DNA of 63,238 bases, counting the filler, from Octopus bimaculoides (Eukaryota): assembly GCF_001194135.2 (NCBI RefSeq). It is 5 parts of 3 records of this genome, joined end to end, with 100 filler letters (N's around TTAATTAATTAA, not from the genome) between each part and the next. Parts side by side here need not be neighbours in the genome. Positions count along the whole stretch, not along the records: positions 31,670 to 61,401 come from NC_068989.1; 4 more parts are not named here. The stretch is one strand, 5' to 3'. Of the stretch, positions 33,631 to 60,947 are shown piece by piece; position 1 is the first letter of the stretch; each line of letters starts with the position of its first letter. A model generated the notes under the pieces. The model saw only the letters and a list, made by a program, of their open reading frames with translations, was not told where the DNA came from and ran no database searches. Both the position numbers and the translations under genes were made by a program.

Positions 33631-34017
33631 TTGTTGTTGTTGGTACTCCGTCGCTTACAACGTCGAGGGTTCCAGTTGATCCGATCAACGGAACAACCTG
33701 CTCGTGAAATTAACGTGCAAGTGGCTGAACACTCCACAGACACGTGTACCCTTAACGTAGTTCTCGGGAATATTCAGCGTGACACAGTGTGACAAGGCTG
33801 ACCCTTTGAATTACAGGCACAACAGAAACAAGAAGTAAGAGTGAGAGAAAGTTGTGGTGAAAGAGTACAGCAGGGTTCGCCACCATCCCCTGCCAGAGCC
33901 TTGTGGAGCTTTAAGTGTTTTCGCTCAATAAACACTCACAACACCCGGTCTGGGAATCGAAACCCCGATCCTATGACCGCGAGTCCGCTGCCCTAACCAC
34001 TGGGCCATTGCGCCTCC
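33631..34017 (-). mobile_element. tRNA-derived SINE family A, full-length copy
   Basis: Pol III A box (tggcccagtggttagg) and B box (ggtttcgattccc), (AAC)n tail; nearly identical to the 42602 and 47057 copies. Confidence 0.88.
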
Positions 34018-34204
34018 ACTACACACACACACATATACATACATACATACATACATACATACATACATACATACATAATTTTCCGCATAGTTTCCATCTT
34101 CCAATTTGCCCACAACATCATTTACTGTAACCCAAGTTATAGTAGAAGACGCTTCTTAACTACACGACCACACGTGCACCAATTGAACAAAGGGAGTTTC
34201 TTAC

Positions 34205-40070: not shown

Positions 40071-40184
40071 CTGTAGGACATTTACAGTCATAGCTATTTC
40101 CTTTAATAGTGCACTTTCCACCATTTTTGCAAACTGAATTTTTACAATAATCGACTGAAAGTTCACAGCCTACTCCAGCAAAAC
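40071..40184 (-). CDS. Exon 9 (visible): EGF, GFAGVGCELSVDYCKNSVCKNGGKCTIKGNSYDCKCPT
   Basis: Acceptor aacttttatag, donor GTAATA; 114 nt, phase 1 to 1. Confidence 0.93.
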
Positions 40185-42239
40185 CTATAAAAGTTGATAG
40201 AAATATATTATAACTTTACGATAAGAACAGAAAATTTCGCTTCANNNNNNNNNNNNNNNNNNNNNNNNNNNNNNNNNNNNNNNNNNNNNNNNNNNNNNNN
40301 NNNNNNNNNNNNNNNNNNNNNNNNNNNNNNNNNNNNNNNNNNNNGTTGTTTATACACCTGTCTTCGTCTTTTGTTTTTCTGTAAATTTGAACTACATATA
40401 TACATACGTACATACATACACTCACACGCACACACACATATACACACACACACACACACACGCACACACACTCGCACATAAAATGCGATTGCTTTATCTT
40501 CAGAGATGATTGTCATCTCCTTGTACTCGTTCATTGTTAATGGCATTTCTGACTTTCAAGCCATGACCTCTCAGTCCCATTCCAGATTTGCACGGTTTGA
40601 AGAATGGGTGACAAACGAAAGTTATAACTCACTGCGTATTTATCAAATGGTTGGGTCTGCACACGTCATTACTCTTCTATCGCCATGGGACTTTTAGTTG
40701 ATGGGATGACGAATGAGGTCACCATAAAAACACATACATACATACGTACGTACATGAATATATACATAAATACATGTATGCATACATACATATATGCATA
40801 CATATATACACACACAAACATACATACATACACACACACACATACATATATGCATACATGCATACATATCTACATACATACCTAAGGCCAGCAATTTTAA
40901 GGCGTTTAGTCGACACCGCGAAGCTTAAAGAATCATAGGTATAGTTGACTCCGGTGAGATATGAACTCGGCAAAACAAAAATAATACCAATAATAATAGG
41001 CCCGAAATTTTTGGGGAAGGTGCGAGTAGATTAGATCGACTCCAGTACACAACTGGTACTTAATTTATCGACCCTGAAAGGATGAAAGGCAAAGCCGACC
41101 TCGGTGGAATTTGAACTCAGGCGCGTGAAGTCAGACGAAATACCGCTAAGCATTCTGTCTGGTGTGCTAACGTTTCTGCCAGGTCACCGTCTTAATAATA
41201 ATAATCATAATGATGATGGTAAATGCTCTGATGCAGTACCAGGCAGTAGCCCTCATGGCTTCTGATGTTAACTGGTGGAAGTGTTATAATGTACATTGCT
41301 TTGTCTTGGTATAAAAGATGGACTACAGCAAATATTCTGCTCAATACCACAGATCTGCTTGTCAGTTGCGTGACCGTAACTAGTTGAGCATGCCTCTTAG
41401 TGGCTGACGATATGTGCATTTCTGATCATGAGTAGTAGTGGGGTGCATCATAGCCATATGTTGATAGGAATTCTTTGGTGCTTGAATAAGTCACCTCTGG
41501 AAACATTGATGTTTCGTTCAACATCCTTAAACAACCCTTATTCAGGGACCTTTTGAACGGGATGGGCTACTTGACTTGAAGAAAATTCTAACTGGGTCCC
41601 ACCTGTAAAGTCATGCGCTGTTTATCTTGATATGAGATCATCATGTCGTGCACATATGGTTGTGATGCATGTGCTTGGTGTACCCTTATCAGGCAAGTAT
41701 ACATGATGGGTATACTGGGCTTTGTATATTTTACCCCAGTGTCTCTTTGATGGCCTGCACTGCTCTCTCGCTAAATAATGATAAGTCCTAAAAGTTTTTG
41801 GCGGGAGTGAACTAGTCGACTACATTGACTCCAGTACATGACTAGTACTTATCGATCCCGAAAGAAATTTGAACTCAGAACGTAAAGACGAACAAAATGC
41901 TGCTAAACATTTCGTCCGACATACTTGTCACCTTAATATCAATAATAATAATGATCCTTTCTGCCAAAGGTACAACGCCTGAAATTTTTGCGGAAGGTGG
42001 TGCTGTCGATTTGATTGACTCCACTACTTAACTGGTACTTACTTTATCGACCCCCTAAGGCTGCGAGGTAAAGTCGACTTCGGCGGAATTTGAACTCAGA
42101 ATGTAAAGACGGACGAAATGCCGCCGAGTATTTTGTCGGATGCTCTACAATTGTGTCCGCTAACCGCCATAAACAACAAAAAACATAAAAAACAATAACA
42201 AGAACAATAATAATAAAAATAATAATAATTATATAGTAC

Positions 42240-42433: not shown

Positions 42434-42601
42434 CTGTGGAAGAAATATCAAAAATATATTAAAAATATATATAATTTCCCCGATTACGTAGGTTTTGATT
42501 CAGGTAACGTCAATGTTGTATTCAAACGAAATAATACCCGAAGAAAATTGATGTATAGTATCGCACCATGTATATATAGGAAGTGTATATTGTACATACG
42601 T

Positions 42602-42991
42602 GGAGGCGCAATGGCCCAGTGGTTAGGGCAGAGGACTCGCGGTCATAAGATCGCGGTTTCGATTCCCAGACTGGGCGTTGTGAGTGTTTATTGAGCGAAA
42701 ACACCTAAAGCTCCACGAGGCTCCGGCAGGGGATGGTGGCGAACCCTGCTGTACTCTTTCACCTCGACTTTTTCTCACTCTTACTTCATGTTTCTGTTGT
42801 GGCTGTAATTCAAAGGGCCAGCCTTGTCACACTGTGTCACGCTGAATATCCCCGAGAACTACGTTAAGAGTACACGTGTCCGTGGAGTGCTCAGCCACTT
42901 GCACGTTAATTTCACGAGCAGGCTGTTCCGTTGATCGGATCAACTGGAACCCTCGACGTCGTAAGCGACGGAGTGCCAACAACAACAACAA
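42602..42991 (+). mobile_element. tRNA-derived SINE family A, full-length copy
   Basis: Same head, body and (AAC)n tail as the 33631 and 47057 copies. Confidence 0.88.
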
Positions 42992-45386: not shown

Positions 45387-45517
45387 ATTGCACATTTCCC
45401 CTTTATAGCCTGGCTTACAGATACATTCGTAATCTTCTACGAGATCCTTGCATTGCATTGTACCTGTTGCATTGCATGTTGCATTGACACAGTCATTTAT
45501 ATTTGTGCAATTCTTGC
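45387..45517 (-). CDS. Exon 7: cbEGF, GKNCTNINDCVNATCNATGTMQCKDLVEDYECICKPGYKGEMCN
   Basis: Acceptor tttctcattttag, donor GTAAGT; 131 nt, phase 1 to 0, bridging exons 6 and 8 exactly. Confidence 0.94.
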
Positions 45518-46765: not shown

Positions 46766-47056
46766 CCTTGATCTGTGACCGTGAGATGAAACTAAAACAA
46801 TTACAGCATAGAAGATTCATTTTATCCATTTGAAAACACACGGAAAGAGTTAGCAATTAACAGTGATTACGCAGTGTTAAAGTATTCGTTGCCTTGTCTG
46901 GATGTGGTCATTTACATAGTTACACTCCAACACCGATATTTTTATATTTTAAAGAAATTTTGTGAAAAAACAAAACAAAACAACAAAACAAAAATCCCAA
47001 AAAAAATCCAATACAAATCATCCTTCTCTTTTTCTGCCGTCTGTATGCAGAATAGT

Positions 47057-47446
47057 GGCGGCGCAATGGCCCAGTGGTTAGGGCAGCGGACTCGCGGTCA
47101 TAGGATTGCGGTTTCGATTCCCAGACTGGGCGTTGTGAGTGTTTATTGAGCGAAAACACCTAAAGCTCAACGAGGCTCCGGCAGGGGATGGTGGCGAACC
47201 CTGCTGTACTCTTTCATCACAACTTTTTCTCACTCTTACTTCCTGTTTCTGTTGTGGCTGTAATTCAAAGGGTCAGCCTTGTCACACTGTGTCACGCTGA
47301 ATATCCGCGAGAACTACGTTAAGGGTACACGTGTCTGTGGAGTGCTCAGCCACTTGCACATTAATTTCACGAGCAGGCTGTTCCGTTGATCGGATCAACT
47401 GGAACCCTCGACGTCGTAAGCGACGGAGGGCTAACAACAACAACAA
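47057..47446 (+). mobile_element. tRNA-derived SINE family A, full-length copy
   Basis: Same head, body and (AAC)n tail. Confidence 0.88.
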
Positions 47447-47573: not shown

Positions 47574-47792
47574 CTTCGTATCCTGAGAAACAATTACACT
47601 GATAATCATTAATAAGGTTTGTGCAAGTGCCACCTTCACAAGGGTTTGGCTCGCAGTTATCATCAATCTTTTGGCAGAACTCTCCACTGTAACCATTGGT
47701 GCATGTGCACATATTTGAGTTGCACGTGCCACCATTGTAGCACTGTATTCCATCGCATGTTGTCTTGTTAAAACATTGTCTTTGGTCCATTA
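47574..47792 (-). CDS. Exon 6: last Cys of the interrupted EGF plus two EGFs, VMDQRQCFNKTTCDGIQCYNGGTCNSNMCTCTNGYSGEFCQKIDDNCEPNPCEGGTCTNLINDYQCNCFSGYE
   Basis: Acceptor tattttccag, donor GTAATT; 219 nt, phase 1 to 1. Confidence 0.95.
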
Positions 47793-48097
47793 CTGGAAAA
47801 TAAATACATTAAATAGTTGAGTAGAACATTTAAAAAAGAAAAATTATTTCACTGATTTGCGCATTACAGTCTTTGGACTGTGCAGCATTTTTGGCCAAAA
47901 ACTCGAACGGTGTTTAGTTGATGAAATCTGCCACTGTAATTATTTTAAACCTGGCATCTGTTCAATTGATCCTTTTTTGCCGAACCACTAGGCGACAGGG
48001 ACGCAGTCAAGCCAACTTTGATTGTCAAACGGCGTGACAAACACAGAGATACGTGCACATGTTTACACATATACAAACGTAAATATTCACACACACG

Positions 48098-48130
<33 letters not shown>

Positions 48131-48689
48131 TCACACACACACGCACACGCACACGCACACACACACACGCGCGTAACTACGTAAGAAACCTGTCATTTAT
48201 ACGCAAGTACAAACAATACATACACATATTTTTATATATCTACAAGCATCTTACATTGTTTCCCTAACAAATACACTCACAAATCATTGGGTGACCCAGT
48301 ATTATAATAGACGACGCTTTCCCAAGGTGACGCTCAGTGGGACTGAACCAGAAACTACCTGGTTGCCACGCACACTTCTTGACTACACAACTAGGCCTGA
48401 AAGTTTACTCTCAGTAAATCTTATTTTGTCTTAACCATTTCCTGTCCATCCTATCTTATTCTTAGAGAGAAACATTGTAAAATCCAGATACGTTGTTGTT
48501 GTTTAGCCCCAGGTTGGCCCTGGCACGAAACACCTTAACCTGATCTGGAATTGAGAAATGGATAAGTAGAAATGGTGTTGTACCTTAATATAAATAACAT
48601 AATTGAGTTCCGAGAAGTTTTCTGACGCATATTGTATGAAAGTGGTTCAGCTTCCTGGCATGACGCTGGTAGACCGTCCAGGACTCGCA

Positions 48690-49035
48690 GCCGTAAAGCA
48701 GCGTTGTGAGAACAACAGCCCAGTACACCTCGATCTTTGTAATGATGGTGATTCCCCTCCTGTTTCAGACAGAGAAAGGTGGCGATCAGCTGTTCACAAG
48801 GGTGCCAACACATGCGAGACCAATAGGATCGCTGCTCGAGAAGACAGCAGACAAACCAGGAAGAACAGAGCTAACAACCCTGTAGCAGGCGCTACCATTC
48901 CCTGTCCACACTGTAAAAAGACTCTTTCGGGCGCAGATTGGCCTCACTAGCCATCTGCAGAGTCACAAAAATAAAGCCCACCCCACCCCACCCCAGGATG
49001 ACTAGATGGTCTTCGTCGCATCGACAGACAAACTA
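48690..49035 (+). mobile_element. RTE-clade LINE 3' end
   Basis: DRERWRSAVHKG..CETNRIAA..RQTRK..TIPCPHCKKT followed by GLTSHL in a shifted frame, then a short 3' UTR. Confidence 0.8.
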
Positions 49036-49805
49036 CAAAAATTGAGTTCCACTGTGACAAGACTTATGCAAAGCTGTATCATTATAGCGGAAACGAAAGC
49101 CTTTCGGTATATGCAATTACTGATATTCCATAAAAAAAAATATAGATATAGAGTGAACTTTGTTACATAGTATACAAGGGAACTGAATGCACAAAAGAAC
49201 ACATATTGAGAGCAATGTAGGTTCGAACGAGATAAAACGAAAATAGTTCAATAAAATTAAGGTTCAGCATTTCATCTTTTCGGGATCGAGAAAACAAGTA
49301 CCATTTGAGTACTGGGAGTCAATGTAATCGATTTACCCTTTCTCCGAAATTGCTGTCCTTGTGCCAAAATTTGAAATCAATATTCGAAAACAATATGTAC
49401 GAAAAGATTTGATCCAGCAGAGTAGTTAACATGCCGGACAAAATGCCTCATGGTATTTTTTCCGCTCTGAGTTCACATACCACCGAGGTTAACTTTCTCT
49501 TCCATCTCTTCGGAGATGATAAAACAACGTACCAGTCAAATATTGGGATCGATCTAATCATCTTGTCTTTTCTCCTCAAAATCTGCGGACAATAAACCCT
49601 ACAACGGACTGGCATCCCTTTCAGAGGAATGCTGTGACATTGGTCACTTATACTCTATGGAAATCGGGTTATCGGCTTCATGACATCTGGGGTTCATGAA
49701 AAAGAAAATGTGCCGTGCTTTTGCTAATTGTTTTCGCTAATAATGCAGCCACGTGTAGATATGGATACCGTCTCGGTTTCCTCGTCCTTGAGCTAACGGA
49801 ACATC

Positions 49806-49873
49806 CATGATGTGAAAGAGGGCTGCATCATGATGTGAAAGAGGGCTGCATCATGATGTGAAAGAGGGCTGCA
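49806..49873. repeat. 23-bp minisatellite, three copies
   Basis: catgatgtgaaagagggctgcat x3, with no spacers. Confidence 0.95.
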
Positions 49874-50634
49874 CCAACCCTAGGATGGTGCTTACTACCG
49901 CCTAGCAGACTGGACCAACGTGAAATGAACTGTCTTTTGTTGAAGGACCCACATGCAGCCTGCTGTAAGGGTATTGAAATGTAAATCACTCATTTCAGTA
50001 TCCATGTTTTTACTGGTGAACTAGAATAAACGGTAAAACCCCACCTCGATCAGGAGTGACTACCTAGAAAGTTACCCTCCGAGACACAAGTCCGGGCAAG
50101 GTTGTTTAAGGAAGACTAGCAGTCGTTCATGCATATCAGCTTCCCCTCTCCACCCCACCGGTGTTATCCAAGGGAAAGGCAAAGGCTGATACAGCTTGAC
50201 ACCAGTAACGTCGCAACTCATTTCTGCAGTTGAGTGAACTGGAGCAACGTGAAATAAAGTGTCTTGCTCAAAACACTACCCGGTTCAGGAATCGAACTCA
50301 CTACCTCATGCGCCTGGGGCATTATATATCATTTCAAAGTACCTGGACTACTGGGATGTTGTAACAATTGAATAATCTGTTGACAAAATTAAAGGTGATT
50401 CGTTGTTCTTTTGAATGTAGACCATCTCAGATCAAGAAAACTGATTATCATAGACCTTACAGTTGTGATCATCAGGTTTCGTGTATCAGAGAACATAGTC
50501 ATCATTGTGGCCATGTTGTCGCTGTCTTTTTGTTGTTACTTAGATCTACGGATTATTAAAAATATTCCGACCATAGGTACTTAATTTTTTTTATTGTAAT
50601 TCACATTTAAGATTACACTTTCCAATACCCTTTT

Positions 50635-51018
50635 ACTCTTTTATTTGTTTCAGTCATTTGGCTGTGGCCATGTTAGAGCACCGCCTTTAGTAGAGCAAAT
50701 CGACCCCAGGACTTATTCTTTTGTAAGCCTAGTACTTATTCTATCGGTGTCTTTTTGCCGAAGCGCTGAGTTACGGGGACGTAAACACACCGGCATCACT
50801 TGTCAAGCGATGTTGGGGGGGGGGCAAACACAGACACTCATATATATATATATTATATATACGATGGGCTTCTTTCAGTTTCCGTCTACCAAATCCACTC
50901 ACAAGGCTTTGGTCGGCCCGAGGCTATAGTAGAAGACACTTGCCTAAGGTGTCACGCAGTGGGACTGAATCCGGAACCATGTGGTTCGTGAGCAAGCTAC
51001 TTACCACACAGCCACTCC
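50635..51018. mobile_element. Composite SINE locus (families C and D)
   Basis: Block ...cagtcatttggctgtggccatg...cttattctatcgg... plus tttcagtttccgtctaccaaatccactcacaagg...cacagccac; the pieces recur at about 19.0, 19.6, 25.8, 30.3-30.6, 43.9, 44.3 and 53.2 kb. Confidence 0.78.
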
Positions 51019-51169
51019 TACAATGTGTTCCTTTTTTGTTAAAGACAGCAGGGAATGATTTGAAGGAGATTTATAGTGAGGAATCCCTGGGAGTTCTTAT
51101 ATTCAGAAAAAAAATCCCAAACAAATTCCACATTATAGTAAAAATTAACAAATTATACAAATGGTATAC

Positions 51170-51365
51170 CTTTGTTGACGTGACACTGGAAACGTAGCTG
51201 ATACGGTGGGCAACTTGGATTACAGCTTTTATTATTTATTATGCAAGCATCACTCAGGTTAAACGACATCCCAAATTGCTGTTGCCAAAGAAAGGGAGCT
51301 CTGTCAACACGTGATCGGCACTGAGTCAGCAAAGGAACCTTTCCATTGCAAACATCGACGCCAAC
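51170..51365 (-). CDS. Exon 5: C-terminal part of WxxW domain, VGVDVCNGKVPLLTQCRSRVDRAPFLWQQQFGMSFNLSDACIINNKSCNPSCPPYQLRFQCHVNK
   Basis: Acceptor ttctatctttag, donor GTATAC; 196 nt, phase 0 to 1, stop-free; six Cys; ends C-x2-Y-x-L-R-F-x-C like mucin WxxW repeats. Not in the ORF track. Confidence 0.85.
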
Positions 51366-51882
51366 CTAAAGATAGAATAAAATTGTGTAGTATTCTACAT
51401 ATTAGATGAAAATAAAAAAAAGAAATAAGTTAAATAAAAGTAGTAGTTTTATTATTAATTATGACTTATTTAACATTATCGCCTATTAAAGAGAGGCACG
51501 AGCTCGCGGAATTGTTATGGTTCCGAACAAAACTGCTTAGCGACATTTCCTCTAGCTCTTTACGTTCTGAGTTCAAATTCCACCGTGGTCGATTTGCCTT
51601 GCATTTTTTTCGGGGTCGTTAAAATAAGTACTGGAGGTGGGGTTGATGCAATCGACTATCTCCCTCCCAACAAAATTTCAATCCTTGTGCATACAGCAGA
51701 AATAATCGTCTGTGTTTTAAGAGAATTATCGAGGCGGGTATCCTGTCCTTTTTTTTTCACATCACAAAGAATTAAGATTAACTTAAAAGACGTACATTCA
51801 AATATTCAGAGCAAATGAATTCTTTCAAAGAACGCTCTAGCAACATTTACAATGCTATTGATACTGAGCTTATTGATATCTA

Positions 51883-52102
51883 CAAGGGGGTGCTGAAAAG
51901 TTCCTGGCTTTAAGGGTGTCACGAAAAGCCTGGCTGGAGGCCCAACTTTCCGAGTGCTTTTACAGGACTTGGAAAAACTGAAGGATAGCTACAAAAAAGT
52001 GTGTAAATCTGAGAGGGACATATACGTTGAATAAAATCATAATTAATTGATCCTCCTGTATTTTCTTTTATCTAAAGCCAGGAATTTTTCAGCACACCCA
52101 TG
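51883..52102. mobile_element. Mariner-like MITE (220 bp)
   Basis: TA|CAAGGGGGTGCTGAAAAGTTCCTGGCTTTA ... TAAAGCCAGGAATTTTTCAGCACACCCATG|TA. Confidence 0.85.
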
Positions 52103-52278
52103 TATAATAAATCGATTAATGAAGAATGCAAGCAACAAATGAATATTATGAATATGATGTAATTCCTTTCAGATTACATTTACTAAAACATCTGGCACGT
52201 ATTCCCAAAGTCTAGATAAAATTACTCACACACACAAACATACACATATATTTGAGTGAATTGTTGCGGAGACACAAC

Positions 52279-52846
52279 GGATCTTTTTTAAAACGGGGGC
52301 CACATTTTTCATTAACGAAACACTTTGAAACTTGGAACACTGGTAGAATGTGTCATATAAAACATCTTTTTCTCTTAGTCTTCTTAAAAAAAAAAGAAAT
52401 CCATAAGTTATTCCATGTTAAAGTTGTCGTATTTCTGTAATTTCAACCAATCACTGACGTCCATTCAGCCGATATACATTAAGTGCCGACTACATAAACA
52501 AACGATTCTGAAACAATTAACCCTAACCCTAGGGTTAGGGTTAGGGTTAGGGTTAAAGCAAATTTAAAATGAAAAAAGCAAATAAAACGAAGGTATTGAG
52601 ATTAAATACGCTTTACACCGCTTAATCAGCCAAAGGAGTAAATATAAACAACTGAATACTTGTCAGTGATTGGTTGAAATTATCGAAATAAGACAATTTT
52701 TTACATGAAATAAATTCGAATACAAAAATATTCTTCTGTTCTATAACACAAAATAGATAAGTATACGAAGTTTGAAAGTCTTTCCGTACCAAAAACACTA
52801 CGTAAAACATTAATGAAAAATGTGGCCCCCGTTTTAAAATAGATCC
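52279..52846. mobile_element. Foldback MITE with long inverted arms, 8-bp TSD and a central telomere-repeat hairpin
   Basis: GACACAAC direct repeat at 52271-52278 and 52847-52854; TIRs begin GGATC; a second inverted pair lies at about 52405-52458 and 52662-52716. Confidence 0.85.
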
Positions 52847-53562
52847 GACACAACTAAAGTCATCTTCATTGCCATCATTGTTGTCATTTTAACATTCAGA
52901 TTTTTCATACTCACAGGGGTCGAACCGAATTTGTTGAGGCAGATTTTCTATGATCGGATACACTTCCTGTCGTTAACTTTCACACATTTCCAAGTTAGGT
53001 AATATTTCCCCATGACCAGTAGCGTTTTTCACCGACGATTGGAAAGAATGGACACCACTTGTATGTAGTGACACTCGCTTACAACTATCATATTATCATG
53101 TGTCTCAAAACAAGGAGACACTTACAAATACGAATACACACGCGTGTGTGTGTATCTATACGCTGGCCTTATTTCAGTTTTCGTTCACCAAATCCACTCA
53201 CAGTGTTTTCTCGGTCCGGGTTTACAGGAGATACATGTCAAAGGTGTTATGCGATGGGACTGAATCTGAAACCATGTGGTTGGGAAGCGAGCTTCTTAAT
53301 TACACAGTGGCATTCGCACCAGATAAAATGCATATCGTGCTTTGTACTAAACATTCATTCGTTACTGAAATTCTCACACAAATTTAACAAACAAGTTCAT
53401 CTCAAATAATGCTACGAAAAAACAAATGCACTTCACTCAGAAGAAATAAGTATGTACGCTAAGTTAGTTTTGTTTTTTAATCTTCTGGGTTACTTTTTTT
53501 TTTTTGTAAAAATGAAATAAAAGAAATTTATAATTTTGTTTTGGTTGAAACTTGAAACTTAC

Positions 53563-53636
53563 ATCACGCAAAGTCTTTACTGCATCTTCTGGTATTCTAG
53601 ATCCGTTTACAGTAAACCACGGACTCCAATAATTCT
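53563..53636 (-). CDS. Exon 4: N-terminal part of WxxW domain, ENYWSPWFTVNGSRIPEDAVKTLRD
   Basis: Acceptor taattgtttcag, donor GTAAGT; 74 nt, phase 1 to 0; W-S-P-W-F motif. Not in the ORF track. Confidence 0.85.
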
Positions 53637-54279
53637 CTGAAACAATTAATCAGAATAACTTGAACGTTTGACAGGAATATATTCTTAGATAGTAAACAAT
53701 TTTCATTAGCTATAACAATGTTATTTTTGATTTGGGAGATATAATAACAGTCAATTCAAATGAAACCTTGAATATTATTATTCCTAATTCCACTGAAACT
53801 CCGTTTGAGATTGCGGCTAGGATATTCGACTGCGTATTGTGCACTTTTTCTCACAGTTCCCCTTTCAGTTCTACACGAAAACTTCCTTCTCTATTGTTTT
53901 CTATGAAATCCTCCAGTCAATAGTATCCTATACAACAGCTCGAAAATTCAGTCGAAACATTATAGTTAAGTTACGAACCAGAAAACTATGATTTTATAAT
54001 AATGCATATCCCTGAGTAAATCTGTTAATTCTTGTTCCATTGAAACCCCACTTAGGGCCAGCGCCAAAACATTAACCTTTCTCTCAGTTCTACAGTGTGC
54101 ACTTCCCAACCAGTCATACCGTGGGAGATTCTTTCATTTTTTAAAATTCTATAACATCTTCTAGTCAACATCTCCATTGCTGCAACTCGAACAATGCTGG
54201 AAATATTACACATCAGGTCGTAAACAAGTCCTAACATTACACCTACCTTCTTTCTTCCGAGAATGACCTCACTGTCTTT

Positions 54280-54455
54280 ATTATTGTCATCTCTTTTTCT
54301 CACAGGTTTTGTTGGAGTTCATGGAGTCTTACCTGCGTAGCGGGCTTGCTACCTGCAGCCTACGGTATCATACTATTTATTCTTTCCGCTATCTAATACT
54401 TTCCTGATTATTCTGGCCGTGCTACATGGAATTAATCGTTTAGTCCCTTCTTGCG
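54280..54455 (-). mobile_element. Short 3' end of a REL retrotransposon next to (AAT)n
   Basis: 'STARIIRKVLDS' matches the 'LGTAxILRKxL' terminus of the other copies. Confidence 0.55.
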
Positions 54456-56290
54456 TAATTTCATTATTATTATTTTTATTATTATTATTATTTTTATTAT
54501 TGCTATTGTTGTTGTTGTTTTTAATTGGATCAAGAAATTTTGTTTCAGTTATTTGGGTGCTGCTGATCATCTAGTTTAGCTTACGCCTAGCACCAGCTCT
54601 ACCCCAGCCATACTCCAGAAGAGGGAAGAGCAACGTAGAAACTGAAAGGATATTTTAATTAAGCTTATTGATGTTGAGAATTGGAAAGTTTGGTTATTAT
54701 ATATTATATGATATATCGTATGACCAAACAACATTGCTGTTTCCTTTATCGTAATACGACATAAACAAAATGGACATTTTCAATAGATATGAAAGAAAAA
54801 AAACAACACAACACAACACTGAAAGAATTTCAATTCATTGTAGGGAGACATGAAGCTGAATAAAAAATAGAAAAAGTGTCTCTTATTTTCCTGTGGGAAA
54901 ATATCTAACAATATCACTTTCTGGATAATCTTTCGCATTTTAGGCACGAAATTAGCTATTTTGTATAGAGGGGGTAAACCGCTTATATCGACCAGTATTT
55001 GACTGGTACGTTATTTTATCGACACTGAAAGGTTGAAAGGTAAAGTTGACCACTCTGGGATTTGAAGTCAGGAAATAAAGAGTTGGAAGAAATTCCGCTA
55101 AACATTATGTCTAACGCGATAACGGTTCTACCATGTAAACACCTTATTATTAAGTGTAATAATCATTTCTAATATAGGTAACACATTTGGAGAAGGAAGA
55201 GTTTGTCGATTACAGTGAGCCAAGTCTTTAACTGGTATTTTATTTTGTTAATCACAAAAAGATGAAGGGCAAAGTTACTTAGCGAAATTTGAACGTAGAA
55301 TATGAAGAACCGGAACAAATAAAGTTAGGTATCGTATCTGACACTCTACCGATTCTGTCAACCAACTGGCTCCCAACTGTTATGCATAAAATATTGCAGA
55401 AGGACAAATTTTGGCAGTACATGGTGCCCATTTTAATAACTTAGTCAAAATCTAAATTGAGAATCAGTAAAGATGAAGTTATATTTTATTTTGGCCCATA
55501 CATACGCGTAGTGAATATGGACTGTCTCCACCACCACCACCACCACCACTACTACTACTGTCCGGAACCTAGTTAACTCAGTAGTCTTTGCTTTTGTTTA
55601 TTAGGAAATAAAACTAAATTTTAAAGTTAAATAAAGATAATTATTTTAAAGCAAGTTTAAGAATAACGACAATATATTTTACTGACGAGAGAAGACTCAA
55701 CCTTGAAAGCAGAGTCAAATTTGTTATATCAGGCGAAAGTCCCCATTAAGAGAACGACTTTTATAAAAACGTTAAATTTATGCTTGCAGCATTTCCATAA
55801 TTTTTGAGACTAGTGTATATGTATTTACCTGTTGGATTTTGGCAATGTTTGGTGAATGTTTCACAGCAAGCATCGTTACTGGTGTTGACTTTACCATTGA
55901 AAAAGTAGCAGTTTTTTGTGTCGTTGTCAAATGTTACTGACTGGCATTGACTGTCGTTGAGACATGCGCTAGTACAATCCTTTGAGGATGCAGCAGCTAC
56001 TGTTTTATAAGAATTTGAAACCTCGTTCCTTGTACTGGATTCATAGGAGAGCTGACAGACCTCGGCTAAAATATTAAAATGGAGAGAGGATCATTAAAAA
56101 ATCGCATTGTATATAAACATACATATATCGAAATGTAAATGTATCCGTCGGTTTCAAGGTTGAGTATTTCAGATTCTGTCGGCCGATTTTTGTCTGGAAA
56201 TAGCAACGAAGTGTGCACGCTGACCAACTGTTCTATCAATAATAAGGACACAAGTTCGAGGGCCTAGACACACATACACATATGCATACA

Positions 56291-56529
56291 TATATATTAG
56301 AAAAAATAAGGTACTCAGATAACTGGATGGTTGTACATTTACAGATTTTTATTAATATGTCATATGTTTTTATAAATTACCGCTTGCATCTATTCTTGTA
56401 GATTCTCCAGAGAATCTACAAGATCAGATGCAAGCGCTAATTTATAGAAAAAATTGACATATTAATAAAAATCTGTAAATGTACAACCATCCAGATATTT
56501 AAGTACCTTATTATTTTTTCTAATATATA
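56291..56529. repeat. ~240-bp inverted repeat, probably a Penelope-related tail-to-tail duplication
   Basis: The arms pair almost throughout, with a 4-nt loop at 56407-56410; the right arm and its flank recur at 28895-29015. Confidence 0.8.
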
Positions 56530-56560
56530 ATTCCTGTACATCACCTCCAAAGTTTCTCAT

Positions 56561-56595
<35 letters not shown>

Positions 56596-56843
56596 CACAC
56601 ACATATATGTATATATATACAAATAAAAGGATAAAAGATTATTAATTTATCAATAAATTAATAATTTCTACCAAGCCCTTAGGTATGTAAACACCATTAT
56701 CGGTGAAGAACTTATTTAAAAGTTCTTATACGTTTATAAACATAATTAAGGGTGATCCCCGTTGCTGATCCCTTAATTATGTTTATTTATATATATATAC
56801 ATACATACATACATGCATACACTTACATACATATATATGTGTA

Positions 56844-56895
<52 letters not shown>

Positions 56896-57300
56896 CATAC
56901 ATATATATGCATACATATATATACATATATATATACATACATAACATTCATATACATACATATATATATACATATATGTACACATACATAACATTCATAT
57001 ACATGCATGCACATATATACAAACATGCATACATATATATGTATATATACATACATATATATATATATGCATACATACATATATATACATAGATATATAT
57101 ACATACATACAAACATACATATATATATATATACATACATACATACATGCATACACTTACATACATATATATGTGTATGTGTGTGTCTATATATATATAT
57201 ATAGACATACACACACAGGCAGACAAATCTTGTATGCGTTTATTACTAAGCGTTAGAATAAATTTATGATGAAAATAGCGTACTAAACTAGTAGTCTTAC

Positions 57301-57510
57301 CGTATGTATAATCTTCGTGACAACTGCATATGCTGTCCATTGCTTCTTCGTTAACAATACAAACGTTTCCGTGACACTTTGATACATTGCACGGATTCTC
57401 TCTGACGCTGCATGTTTTTCCAGACAACCCGCTTGGGCACTGACACTCAAAACCACCAACTAAATCAGTGCAATTTCCGTTAAAAAGACATGGAGAGCTT
57501 GCACAATCGT
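57301..57510 (-). CDS. Exon 3: calcium-binding EGF plus the first five Cys of the next [73 protein letters not shown]
   Basis: Acceptor accctttcag, donor GTAAGA; 210 nt, phase 1 to 1; cbEGF consensus D-D-C...C-x-D-x4-F-x-C. Confidence 0.95.
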
Positions 57511-59113: not shown

Positions 59114-59247
59114 CAATATTGCTTTCACATTTCTCCCCTGTAAACCCGGGTAGACAGTTGCATTTAGCGCGTTCATTACCAAGATCCTCGCAACTAGAAG
59201 CATTTTGGCAAGGGTTTGCGCTACACGGCAAAACACGGGTATCACAA
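59114..59247 (-). CDS. Exon 2: EGF repeat, CDTRVLPCSANPCQNASSCEDLGNERAKCNCLPGFTGEKCESNI
   Basis: Acceptor ttttattccag, donor GTAAAT; 134 nt, phase 2 to 1, in frame with both neighbours. Confidence 0.94.
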
Positions 59248-60817: not shown

Positions 60818-60947
60818 TGGTCGCCAGAGAATCCACTTGGACAATGACATTCATTCGAATTCAACTTGTTGATACATATTCCGTTGTTTAAGCATAAGCC
60901 AGATGTACAAGTTTTCTGGATAATTTCACACTGTGTTCCATTGGTTC
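60818..60947 (-). CDS. Exon 1 (visible): EGF repeat, GTNGTQCEIIQKTCTSGLCLNNGICINKLNSNECHCPSGFSGDH
   Basis: Acceptor tttctaccag, donor GTATGT; 130 nt, phase 1 to 2; EGF cysteine spacing. Confidence 0.92.

What the first reader, a model, noticed from the sequence alone, without database searches (positions are those of the whole stretch)
47574..57510. A frame-neutral two-exon WxxW (mucin/CILP-type) domain sits inside the last loop of an EGF repeat
Seen: exon 57510-57301 ends after EGF Cys5 (..[11 protein letters not shown]), and the missing Cys6 starts exon 47792 (VMDQRQC). Between them lie exons 53636-53563 and 51365-51170 (74+196 = 270 nt, phases 1-0-1), encoding W-S-P-W-F ... C...P...QCR ... 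C ... C-x2-Y-x-L-R-F-x-C. Known: this pattern resembles the Cys-rich WxxW repeat (Pfam Mucin2_WxxW) of MUC2/MUC5/CILP, and I do not recall it in the EGF array of uif-type proteins. Inference: this is either a domain inserted within an EGF loop by exon shuffling, or a splice switch. Skipping both exons gives an intact EGF (C5-x12-C6); including them displays a 90-aa WxxW module from the loop, which could change adhesion or matrix binding.
Basis: partly seen in the sequence, partly recalled or inferred. Interest (0 to 1): 0.82.

Follow-up and report, generated by a model that had tools for sequence, protein, structure and literature searches.

The report
PAN plus WxxW domains splitting an EGF

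Summary
The piece is Octopus bimaculoides LOC106868257 (XP_052826892.1, 3176 aa), minus strand. It is a uif/SVEP1-like mosaic protein. A fifth exon was missed: 56065-55829 (237 nt, phase 1-1). It lies between 57301 and 53636, is in the RefSeq protein and encodes a PAN/apple domain (Pfam 30.1 bits against cutoff 21.4; confident AF2 fold; Foldseek hits to HGF-N and factor XI apple).

The order is therefore EGF (five Cys) - PAN - WxxW - 'QRQC' - EGF.

The cassette is a divergent WxxW/CysD domain. Pfam PF13330 aligns full-length at 18.6 bits in Octopus (below cutoff 22.4) and 23.1 bits in Argonauta (above). hhalign against solved mucin CysDs gives 90.6% probability. It keeps six of the eight core mucin cysteines and lacks the GDxE calcium motif.

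The same exons occur in Argonauta, a cuttlefish and other contigs. A bivalve gene model has EGF-PAN-'GQC'-EGF without the cassette.

Whether PAN+WxxW sits inside the EGF Cys5-Cys6 loop (favoured, about 0.6-0.65) or follows a closed EGF is unresolved.

No evidence for exon skipping was found, and none could be sought with these tools. Modest interest.

The parts
57301..57510 (-). Exon, 210 nt, phase 1-1. It encodes one complete EGF (DCASSPC...GKTC) plus the first five cysteines of the next EGF ([13 protein letters not shown]...[11 protein letters not shown]). This is the N-terminal part of the split EGF.
   Evidence: Pfam EGF hit. The junctions are identical to XP_052826892.1.
55829..56065 (-). 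It encodes a PAN/apple domain (AEVCQLS...KHCQNPT; P0010 residues 1942-2020). It includes the cephalopod-only CC pair (DACC).
   Evidence: Pfam PAN_1 30.1 bits against cutoff 21.4. AF2 pLDDT 75-91 for residues 41-111 of the modelled segment. Foldseek hits to HGF N domain, factor XI/prekallikrein apple, TgMIC4 and Eimeria PAN. A profile search hits PDB apple/PAN chains and aligns the AEVC cysteine to the first Cys of factor XI apple-4.
53563..53636 (-). WxxW cassette exon 1, 74 nt, phase 1-0. It encodes (E)NYWSPWFTVNGSRIPEDAVKTLRD and carries the W-S-P-W motif.
   Evidence: A homologous exon with the same boundaries is at L001 7720-7797 and L002 34-108.
51170..51365 (-). WxxW cassette exon 2, 196 nt, phase 0-1. 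It encodes VGVDVCNGKVPLLTQCRS...SCPPYQLRFQCHVNK, with six cysteines.
   Evidence: Homologous exons are in P0005, P0008 and P0141 (loci L001-L005). Pfam PF13330. hhalign.
47574..47792 (-). Exon, 219 nt, phase 1-1. It starts with VMDQRQC (an invariant cysteine and the candidate Cys6 of the split EGF). It continues with a complete EGF, then a second EGF as far as ..CNCFSGYE, again cut by a phase-1 intron inside the Cys5-Cys6 loop.
   Evidence: The QC cysteine is invariant in Octopus, Argonauta, L001 and the bivalve. Five residues separate it from the next cysteine, like Cys6->Cys1 elsewhere in the array.
59114..59247 (-). Upstream EGF exon of the same gene (context).
45387..45517 (-). Downstream EGF exon of the same gene (context). 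It begins (G)KNC, the tail of the EGF split at 47574.

Best explanation
The region is part of a giant secreted or membrane mosaic protein, LOC106868257. The domains detected are LDLa, CUB, sushi, calcium-binding EGF, HYR, ephrin-receptor-like repeats, an EGF array, laminin-G and further ephrin-receptor-like repeats. The N-terminus looks like a C-type lectin to the eye, but no profile scored it.

In the middle of the EGF array, three consecutive exons form a 507-nt, phase 1-1, frame-neutral block. One exon encodes a PAN/apple domain. Two exons encode a cysteine-reduced, divergent WxxW/CysD domain. The block lies in an intron position that cuts an EGF repeat between Cys5 and the end of its last loop.

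The most likely history has two steps.
1. A symmetrical 1-1 PAN exon was shuffled into a phase-1 intron inside an EGF Cys5-Cys6 loop. This state is seen in the bivalve model.
2. A 1-0/0-1 WxxW exon pair was added into the phase-1 intron just downstream of the PAN exon. This happened before octopods and decapods split.

The most likely topology is nested. The apple-type first and last cysteines (AEVC and KHC) pin the PAN termini together. EGF Cys5 pairs with the invariant cysteine of QRQC. PAN and WxxW are then both displayed from the last EGF loop.

Functionally, I infer a constitutive pair of binding modules on a rigid EGF stalk. PAN/apple domains bind protein or carbohydrate. CysD-type domains make non-covalent cross-links, and the W-S-P-W motif is a possible C-mannosylation site.

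What is shown and what is inferred:
- Shown: exon structure, domain identities, conservation.
- Inferred: order of the two insertions, disulfide topology, function.
For: Exons, phases and identity to the RefSeq protein:
-.

PAN/apple identity:
-.

WxxW/CysD identity:
-.

Conservation in coleoids:
- Argonauta hians P0003 has the same EGF-PAN-WxxW-QC-EGF order.
- L001 carries the PAN exon, both WxxW exons and an EGF exon starting 'VMQNNQC', in the same order.
- Protein P0008 lies on Logan contigs. One is from run ERR12945500, which is Acanthosepion esculentum reads.
- All six cassette cysteines and both tryptophans are invariant.

Bivalve comparison:
- Sinanodonta P0124 has ..CSCSIPYETKYLNVC[PAN]TIGCSNVDSGQCQLIDSC.. 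with no cassette and no CC pair.

For the nested topology:
- The AEVC cysteine aligns to the first Cys of factor XI apple-4.
- In the Argonauta Pfam hit, the last PAN_1 model position falls on the KYC cysteine. I take this to correspond to the apple last Cys.
- QRQC is followed by the next cysteine after 5 residues, as Cys6->Cys1 is in the rest of the array (5-6 residues in 31 of 33 cases). Canonical Cys5-Cys6 spacing is 8 in 28 of 33 cases and never 9.
- P0124 has a second PAN flanked by an unmistakable split EGF: CTCPTDSKC...YKNCDLLFVGNRCE.
- Other EGFs of this gene are cut by introns in the same loop, at 47574 (CNCFSGYE|GKNC) and at 60818.
Against: - The AEVC cysteine lies 9 residues after Cys5, close to the canonical 8. 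The exon boundary (YTY|AEVC) mirrors CFSGYE|GKNC. A serial topology (EGF closed by AEVC, PAN with only two core disulfides, KHC paired with QRQC) fits the sequence about as well.
- The cephalopod-only CC pair has no assigned partner in the nested model.
- AF2 gave no usable model for the EGF half or the WxxW part (pLDDT below 50; mean 34), so neither the CysD fold nor any disulfide is shown.
- The Octopus cassette itself scores below the Pfam cutoff. The cuttlefish cassette gets no Pfam hit.
- 'Absent in bivalves' rests on one imperfect gene model. A predictor could have skipped a frame-neutral cassette, and the genomic DNA could not be fetched.
Confidence: 0.7

Rival explanations
1. Serial, not nested. 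The EGF is closed by the AEVC cysteine at the start of the PAN exon. PAN and WxxW are then ordinary beads on a string between two complete EGFs. The KHC and QRQC cysteines form a separate disulfide that closes a loop around the WxxW domain only.
For: - Cys5-x9-Cys is near the canonical x8.
- The intron position and the 4-residue tail 'AEVC' mirror 'GKNC' after the intron at 47574.
- Many PAN domains (HGF N, plasminogen) have only the two core disulfides (established knowledge). The top Foldseek hits include HGF N.
Against: - A spacing of 9 is not seen in any canonical EGF of the three orthologues, and the bivalve spacing is 12.
- The AEVC cysteine aligns to the first Cys of factor XI apple-4.
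- QRQC sits at the Cys6->Cys1 distance from the next EGF.
- The paralogous bivalve PAN is clearly nested in an EGF.
Confidence: 0.33
2. The two WxxW exons (or all three exons) form an alternatively spliced cassette that switches an adhesion or matrix-binding module on and off.
For: - Skipping 270, 237 or 507 nt keeps the frame.
- The form without the cassette equals the bivalve architecture, so it should fold.
Against: - Both Octopus protein models in the databases and the Argonauta model include all exons.
- RefSeq lists the protein without an isoform label.
- All splice sites are ordinary strong AG/GT sites.
- Symmetrical phase is expected from exon shuffling alone.
- No transcript evidence could be examined.
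Confidence: 0.12
3. The cassette is not homologous to mucin CysD/WxxW domains. It would be a cephalopod-specific cysteine-rich module that shares a WxxW motif and a Y-x-L-R-F-x-C tail by convergence.
For: - phmmer against 1.84 billion representative proteins found only cephalopod-type sequences plus repeat artefacts, and no mucin or CILP.
- PDB sequence searches found no CysD.
- The Octopus Pfam score is below the cutoff.
- Mucin Cys1, Cys8 and the GDxE calcium motif are missing.
- AF2 could not fold it.
Against: - Full-length Pfam alignments in the same register for three species, one above the cutoff.
- hhalign 90.6% probability over 79 columns, roughly 10 standard deviations above a column-shuffle null.
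- Matching order of W-x-x-W, C..P...C-R, two middle cysteines and C-x2-Y-x-[LIV]-R-x-x-C.
Confidence: 0.15
4. The PAN+WxxW block is ancestral to molluscs. The WxxW part was lost in the bivalve, or merely left out of its gene model.
For: - P0124 is a partial, visibly imperfect model with apparent intron read-through.
- A frame-neutral cassette is easily skipped by predictors.
- CysD domains are reported in lophotrochozoan mucin-like proteins, so the module was available early (PMC4948705).
Against: - The bivalve PAN exon also lacks the CC pair that accompanies the cassette in all three cephalopod sequences that cover the PAN exon (Octopus, Argonauta, L001).
- No bivalve or gastropod sequence matched the cassette among 1.84 billion representatives.
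Confidence: 0.25

Closest known systems
Mucin CysD domains (Pfam PF13330 Mucin2_WxxW; solved for MUC2 CysD1 6tm6, MUC5AC 8ov0 and 8qtb, MUC5B 8oer)
   Same: - About 90 aa.
- W-[ST]-x-W near the N-terminus.
- C-x4-P-x4-C-R, two middle cysteines, and C-x2-Y-x-[LIV]-R-x-x-C at the end.
- Full-length Pfam alignment, and hhalign 90.6%.
- Placed as an isolated globular module between other elements of an extracellular protein.
   Different: - Only six of the eight core cysteines. The cysteine just before WxxW and the second cysteine of the terminal CC are absent.
- The invariant G-D-x-E/T calcium-site motif of the mucin domains is absent.
- It is not flanked by PTS mucin repeats. It sits between a PAN domain and an EGF.
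- The sequence is so diverged that single-sequence searches do not connect it.
- The fold is not verified.
Apple/PAN domains (Pfam PF00024; factor XI and prekallikrein apple domains, HGF N domain, apicomplexan MIC apple domains)
   Same: - The core C-x3-C-x5-C...C pattern.
- Pfam score above the cutoff.
- Confident AF2 fold superposing at 2-3 A on these structures.
- Outer cysteines at apple-like positions.
   Different: - Encoded by a single 1-1 exon inside an EGF array.
- Cephalopod copies carry an extra CC pair.
- Probably nested in an EGF loop rather than in tandem.
Drosophila Uninflatable (Uif) and vertebrate SVEP1-type mosaic proteins
   Same: - A very large extracellular protein combining CUB, sushi/CCP, HYR and a long EGF array. 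The N-terminus also looks like a C-type lectin to the eye, though no profile scored it (Uif domains as listed in PMC3340373).
- A UniRef fragment of this gene is named SVEP1.
   Different: - The published Uif description lists FA58C domains and no PAN, WxxW, LDLa or ephrin-receptor-like repeats.
- The Octopus protein has no FA58C hit but has LDLa, many ephrin-receptor-like repeats and laminin-G.
- Orthology was not tested here.

Membership tests
Mucin2_WxxW / CysD (PF13330) | Score at or above Pfam's gathering cutoff (22.4 bits) | tested here: inconclusive
   Scores were Octopus cassette 18.6 bits (E 0.0032), Argonauta orthologue 23.1 bits (E 1.2e-4, above cutoff), L001 15.3 bits, cuttlefish none and majority consensus 21.4 bits. 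All hits cover model positions 1-88/88. The Octopus hit drops out of the list when scanned inside a 181-aa context.
Mucin2_WxxW / CysD (PF13330) | Profile-level similarity to solved CysD domains | tested here: met
   hhalign of four cephalopod cassettes against four PDB CysDs gave probability 90.6%, E 1.3e-6 and 79 columns. The local rerun scored 35.9, against 11.6 +/- 2.5 (maximum 23.7) for 200 column shuffles.
Mucin2_WxxW / CysD (PF13330) | WxxW (C-mannosylation-type) motif at the N-terminus | tested here: met
   The motif is WSPW, WTPW, WTPW and WTPW in the four cephalopod sequences. Both Trp are invariant. Actual mannosylation cannot be tested here.
Mucin2_WxxW / CysD (PF13330) | Full cysteine set of the mucin domain (ten Cys and five disulfides in MUC2 CysD, PMC3195396; eight within the core aligned here) | tested here: not met
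   There are six cysteines. The Cys before WxxW and the second Cys of the terminal CC are replaced. Three local pairs remain possible.
Mucin2_WxxW / CysD (PF13330) | Calcium-binding G-D-x-E/T segment (two Ca2+ in the MUC2 CysD1 crystal, PMC7599080) | tested here: not met
   G19, D20 and T23 are invariant in the mucin set. They align to IPEDAV, TPAETL, EPQAVR and KPLEVQ in cephalopods.
Mucin2_WxxW / CysD (PF13330) | Small beta-sandwich fold with a Trp ladder | tested here: inconclusive
   AF2 with 5-6 sequences gave pLDDT 30-44 in context and a mean of 34 in isolation. No fold comparison is meaningful.
PAN/apple (PF00024) | Pfam cutoff and PAN fold | tested here: met
   30.1 bits against cutoff 21.4. 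AF2 pLDDT 75-91. Foldseek hits to HGF N, factor XI and prekallikrein apple, TgMIC4 and Eimeria PAN over about 79 columns at 2-3 A. PDB profile hits down to E 3e-6.
PAN/apple (PF00024) | Apple-type outer disulfide joining the first and last cysteines | not testable with these tools
   The positions fit. The AEVC Cys aligns to the first Cys of factor XI apple-4. In the Argonauta hit the last PAN_1 model position falls on the KYC cysteine. The bond itself needs chemistry or coordinates.
EGF-like domain with a nested insertion | Cys5 bonded to a Cys6 that lies after the inserted domain(s) | not testable with these tools
   Only indirect evidence is available: spacing statistics, invariance of the QC cysteine, and the paralogous bivalve PAN flanked by ..CTCPT and LFVGNRCE. 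The rival partner AEVC is not excluded.
Alternatively spliced cassette exon | Frame-preserving length | tested here: met
   270 nt for the WxxW pair, 237 nt for PAN and 507 nt for all three.
Alternatively spliced cassette exon | Transcripts with and without the exon(s) | not testable with these tools
   Only inclusion forms exist among the database proteins. No RNA-seq access.
Uninflatable (uif) orthologue | Orthology and shared architecture, including FA58C domains | not tested
   Domain lists overlap but differ. No Uif sequence was compared.

The most novel reading that the evidence does not exclude
Two whole globular domains, an apple/PAN domain and a cysteine-reduced CysD/WxxW domain, are displayed together from the Cys5-Cys6 loop of a single EGF repeat. 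The loop would be closed by a disulfide spanning about 180 residues. It would have been built by two successive exon-shuffling events into the same phase-1 intron: PAN first, as in bivalves, then WxxW in the cephalopod stem. That would be a clean, datable example of stepwise nested domain insertion in an EGF, and of a CysD domain recruited outside mucins into a uif/SVEP1-like adhesion protein.
Probability: 0.5. Interest if true: 0.45.

Novelty: new variant of a known kind. Interest (0 to 1): 0.3.

Why it matters
If the nested reading holds, this locus shows how phase-1 introns inside EGF loops can accept whole domains one after another without breaking the host repeat. The intermediate state is still visible in a bivalve.

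It also extends the CysD/WxxW domain to a six-cysteine form without the calcium motif, in a non-mucin adhesion protein of cephalopods. That bears on what the minimal CysD fold needs.

It does not open a long-standing question. The gene is annotated, both domains are known kinds, and exon shuffling of 1-1 modules is textbook.

Tried and rejected
- **Word-indexed protein searches.** The 232-aa reader peptide found one generic EGF protein. A 710-aa EGF-PAN-WxxW-EGF-LamG query was swamped by Jagged, Delta, Crumbs and fibropellin, and returned nothing longer than about 1250 aa, so no full-length orthologues. A profile of the cassette found only three ORF fragments.
- **Bacterial hits.** The phmmer hits P0004, P0006 and P0009 are sums over Ig_7 or TPR repeats and are not homologues.
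- **PDB sequence searches.** Searches with the Octopus cassette, the Argonauta cassette and a four-sequence profile gave no CysD hit. Real CysD sequences were obtained only by querying with a remembered MUC5AC CysD sequence, which matched 8ov0 almost exactly.
- **AlphaFold2.** The 282-aa segment was confident only for PAN. The isolated 119-aa WxxW region had mean pLDDT 34. No coordinates are returned, so cysteine distances could not be read.
- **Bivalve genomic DNA.** DNA of P0124 was wanted to look for unannotated cassette exons. It was not retrievable because the gene spans 145 kb.
- **Thrombospondin type-1 repeat.** WSPW prompted this reading, but no CSxxCG follows and there is no Pfam hit. 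Rejected.
- **Duplicated or mutually exclusive copies.** None of the cassette or PAN exon exist in the introns.
- **Upstream split-EGF exon in L001.** Not present in the 1.6 kb available.
- **Literature.** No paper was found that describes PAN or WxxW domains in Uif-type proteins.

Full report
**What the window is.** The piece 31670-61401 carries, on the minus strand, part of Octopus bimaculoides LOC106868257. Its cluster holds RefSeq XP_052826892.1, 'uncharacterized protein LOC106868257', 3176 aa (P0010). Pfam on P0010 finds LDLa, CUB, sushi, calcium-binding EGF, HYR, many ephrin-receptor-like repeats, eleven or more EGFs and laminin-G. This is a uif/SVEP1-like mosaic. Published Uif has CLECT, CUB, CCP, FA58C, HYR and 18 EGFs, with no PAN or WxxW mentioned (PMC3340373). 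Orthology to uif was not tested.

**Checking the observation.**
- Their boundaries, AG/GT sites and lengths are exact.
- A brute-force spliced translation reproduces P0010 residues 1784-2595 from the window, with every junction GT-AG.
- Phases are: 57510-57301, 1-1; 53636-53563, 1-0; 51365-51170, 0-1; 47792-47574, 1-1.

The annotated protein, however, has 79 more residues between ..[11 protein letters not shown] and ENYWSPWF. It is 237 nt, phase 1-1, with ttttag|CC..ACAG|gtaaat.

**The missed exon is a PAN/apple domain.**
- Pfam PAN_1 scores 30.1 bits against a cutoff of 21.4.
- AlphaFold2 is confident only for this part of a 282-aa segment, with pLDDT 75-91 for residues 41-111.
- Foldseek places that part on HGF N domains, factor XI and prekallikrein apple domains, and apicomplexan apple/PAN modules, over about 79 columns at 2-3 A.
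- A five-sequence profile hits the same PDB families by sequence. It aligns the conserved cysteine of 'AEVC' to the first cysteine of factor XI apple-4.

**Is the cassette a WxxW domain?** Single-sequence evidence is thin.
- PF13330 scores 18.6 bits for Octopus (cutoff 22.4), although it is full-length at 1-88/88.
- There is nothing in the PDB by sequence.
- No mucin or CILP appears among 1.84 billion representatives.

Three further lines raise it to a well-supported remote homology.
- The bare cassettes of the orthologues hit the same family in the same register. Argonauta scores 23.1 bits (above the cutoff), L001 15.3 bits and the consensus 21.4 bits. The cuttlefish sequence gets no hit.
- I retrieved four genuine CysD sequences from PDB chains 8ov0, 8oer, 6tm6 and 8qtb and aligned them. 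The cephalopod profile aligns to this mucin profile with hhalign probability 90.6% and E 1.3e-6 over 79 columns.
- A null of 200 column shuffles gave scores of 11.6 +/- 2.5 with a maximum of 23.7, against 35.9 for the real alignment.

The domain is a stripped variant.
- It keeps six of the eight core mucin cysteines.
- It lacks the cysteine before WxxW and the second of the terminal CC.
- It lacks the invariant G-D-x-E/T calcium motif (calcium sites and fold are described in PMC7599080; the ten cysteines are described in PMC3195396).
- The fold could not be checked, because AF2 on the isolated region gave a mean pLDDT of 34.

**Conservation.**
- Argonauta hians GAB1603456.1 (P0003) has the same ..CSCQEEYTYAEVC[PAN]..YWTPW[WxxW]..QC-EGF order.
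- A 100-kb ENA contig (L001) has, in order, the PAN exon, WxxW exon 1 (DNFWTPWYS..), WxxW exon 2 and an EGF exon starting 'VMQNNQC', with identical exon splits.
- Short Logan contigs L002-L005 carry one or both cassette exons.
- One of those runs, ERR12945500, is Acanthosepion esculentum reads (bioRxiv 10.1101/2025.04.22.649952; taxonomy).
- The block therefore predates the octopod-decapod split. Both tryptophans and all six cysteines are invariant.

**The bivalve intermediate.** A partial Sinanodonta woodiana orthologue (P0124) reads ..ARCSCSIPYETKYLNVC[PAN]YYTIGCSNVDSGQCQLIDSC-EGF...
- The alignment puts its TIGC on the cephalopod KHC, and its GQC on QRQC.
- It has no cassette, and none of the CC pair that the three cephalopod sequences covering the PAN exon carry.
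- This suggests PAN was there first and the WxxW exon pair was added later, into the phase-1 intron after the PAN exon.
- The caveat is that this is one imperfect gene model, and its DNA could not be fetched.

**Is anything 'inside an EGF loop'?** Seven cysteines outside the canonical set are invariant. In the numbering of the 282-aa segment (P0010 1906-2187) they are C40 (AEVC), the four PAN-core cysteines, C111 (KHC) and C212 (QRQC). EGF Cys5 is C30. Two pairings are possible.
- Nested: C30-C212 and C40-C111.
- Serial: C30-C40 and C111-C212.

Evidence for the nested pairing:
- C40 and C111 occupy the apple first and last cysteine positions.
- C212 is 5 residues from the next EGF's Cys1, the normal Cys6->Cys1 distance. 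Cys5-Cys6 is 8 residues in 28 of 33 canonical EGFs of the three proteins and never 9.
- P0124 has a second PAN flanked by obvious EGF halves, CTCPTDSKC...YKNCDLLFVGNRCE.
- Other EGFs of this gene are cut by introns in the same loop.

Evidence for the serial pairing:
- AEVC is only one residue off the canonical spacing.
- It follows the intron exactly as GKNC does at 47574.

I put nested at roughly 0.6-0.65.

**Splice switch.** Skipping 270, 237 or 507 nt keeps the frame. That is also what exon shuffling of 1-1 modules predicts. All database models include the exons, and no duplicated alternative exons exist. Transcript data could not be examined, so the idea is untested but has no positive support.

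**Mechanism (inferred).** I read this as a constitutive pair of binding modules held on an EGF stalk.
- PAN/apple domains bind protein or carbohydrate.
- CysD domains make non-covalent contacts in mucins (PMC3195396, PMC7599080).
- W-S-P-W is a candidate C-mannosylation site.
- With the calcium motif and two cysteines missing, binding properties may differ from those of mucin CysDs.

**Verdict.** This is a real, conserved, correctly annotated piece of domain shuffling. It is a new architectural variant of known domains, of modest interest.

Noticed in passing
window 40071-40344 (minus strand): RefSeq joins 42240->40213 and reads 'FYC|SYNIFLSTFIG FAGVGCELS'. The exon start lies 32 nt from the assembly gap 40245-40344. 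A stronger acceptor, ttttatag|GTTTTGCTGGAGTAGGCTGT, at about 40184 would give the usual EGF tail (G)FAGVGCE. Argonauta has about 45 extra residues here (SCKFNTYGQQCESSLSLCKFANPC...). The Octopus model probably runs into intron and lacks exon sequence lost in the gap.
   Followed up: partly
window 33631-34021, 42600-42988, 47053-47443: There are three copies (94-96% identical) of a roughly 390-nt interspersed repeat in introns, one in the opposite orientation to the other two. The copy at 47053-47443 starts about 130 nt beyond the donor of exon 47792-47574. ARAGORN found no tRNA-like head.
   Followed up: partly
window 56739-57277: A long TA/CA-rich microsatellite block begins about 25 nt 3' of the donor of exon 57510-57301. 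Similar blocks lie at 40706-40880 and elsewhere. They create long spurious ORFs rich in C, Y and I.
   Followed up: no
P0124 (Sinanodonta woodiana) residues about 195-300: A second, upstream PAN domain is flanked by the two halves of an EGF (..VQCTCPTDSKC[PAN]YKNCDLLFVGNRCEIDYINEC). This is the clearest case of a PAN nested in an EGF Cys5-Cys6 loop. Octopus and Argonauta have no PAN at that position.
   Followed up: partly
L001 11716-11760: The EGF exon after the cassette starts 'VMQNNQCEKK'. It then needs a 1-nt correction in a run of nine A to continue as ..KSACYDIHCENGGKC. This is either a homopolymer assembly error or a disabled copy.
   Followed up: no
P0003 (Argonauta hians) residues about 1975-2000: A linker with a run of eight glutamines (..QANTSLTQQQQQQQQC) separates the end of the WxxW domain from the conserved cysteine. 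In Octopus the linker is 10 residues (HVNKVMDQRQ). The linker length is clearly free to vary.
   Followed up: no
P0010 residues about 1270-1335 (outside the window): The RefSeq protein contains '[64 protein letters not shown]'. This looks like translated microsatellite. The older model P0002 lacks it, so it is probably a model artefact.
   Followed up: no
(proteins P0004, P0006, P0009): Bacterial proteins reached E 1e-4 to 1e-11 against the 90-aa cassette only by summing many weak matches to their own Ig_7 or TPR repeats. This is a warning about multi-repeat hits in the representative search.
   Followed up: yes
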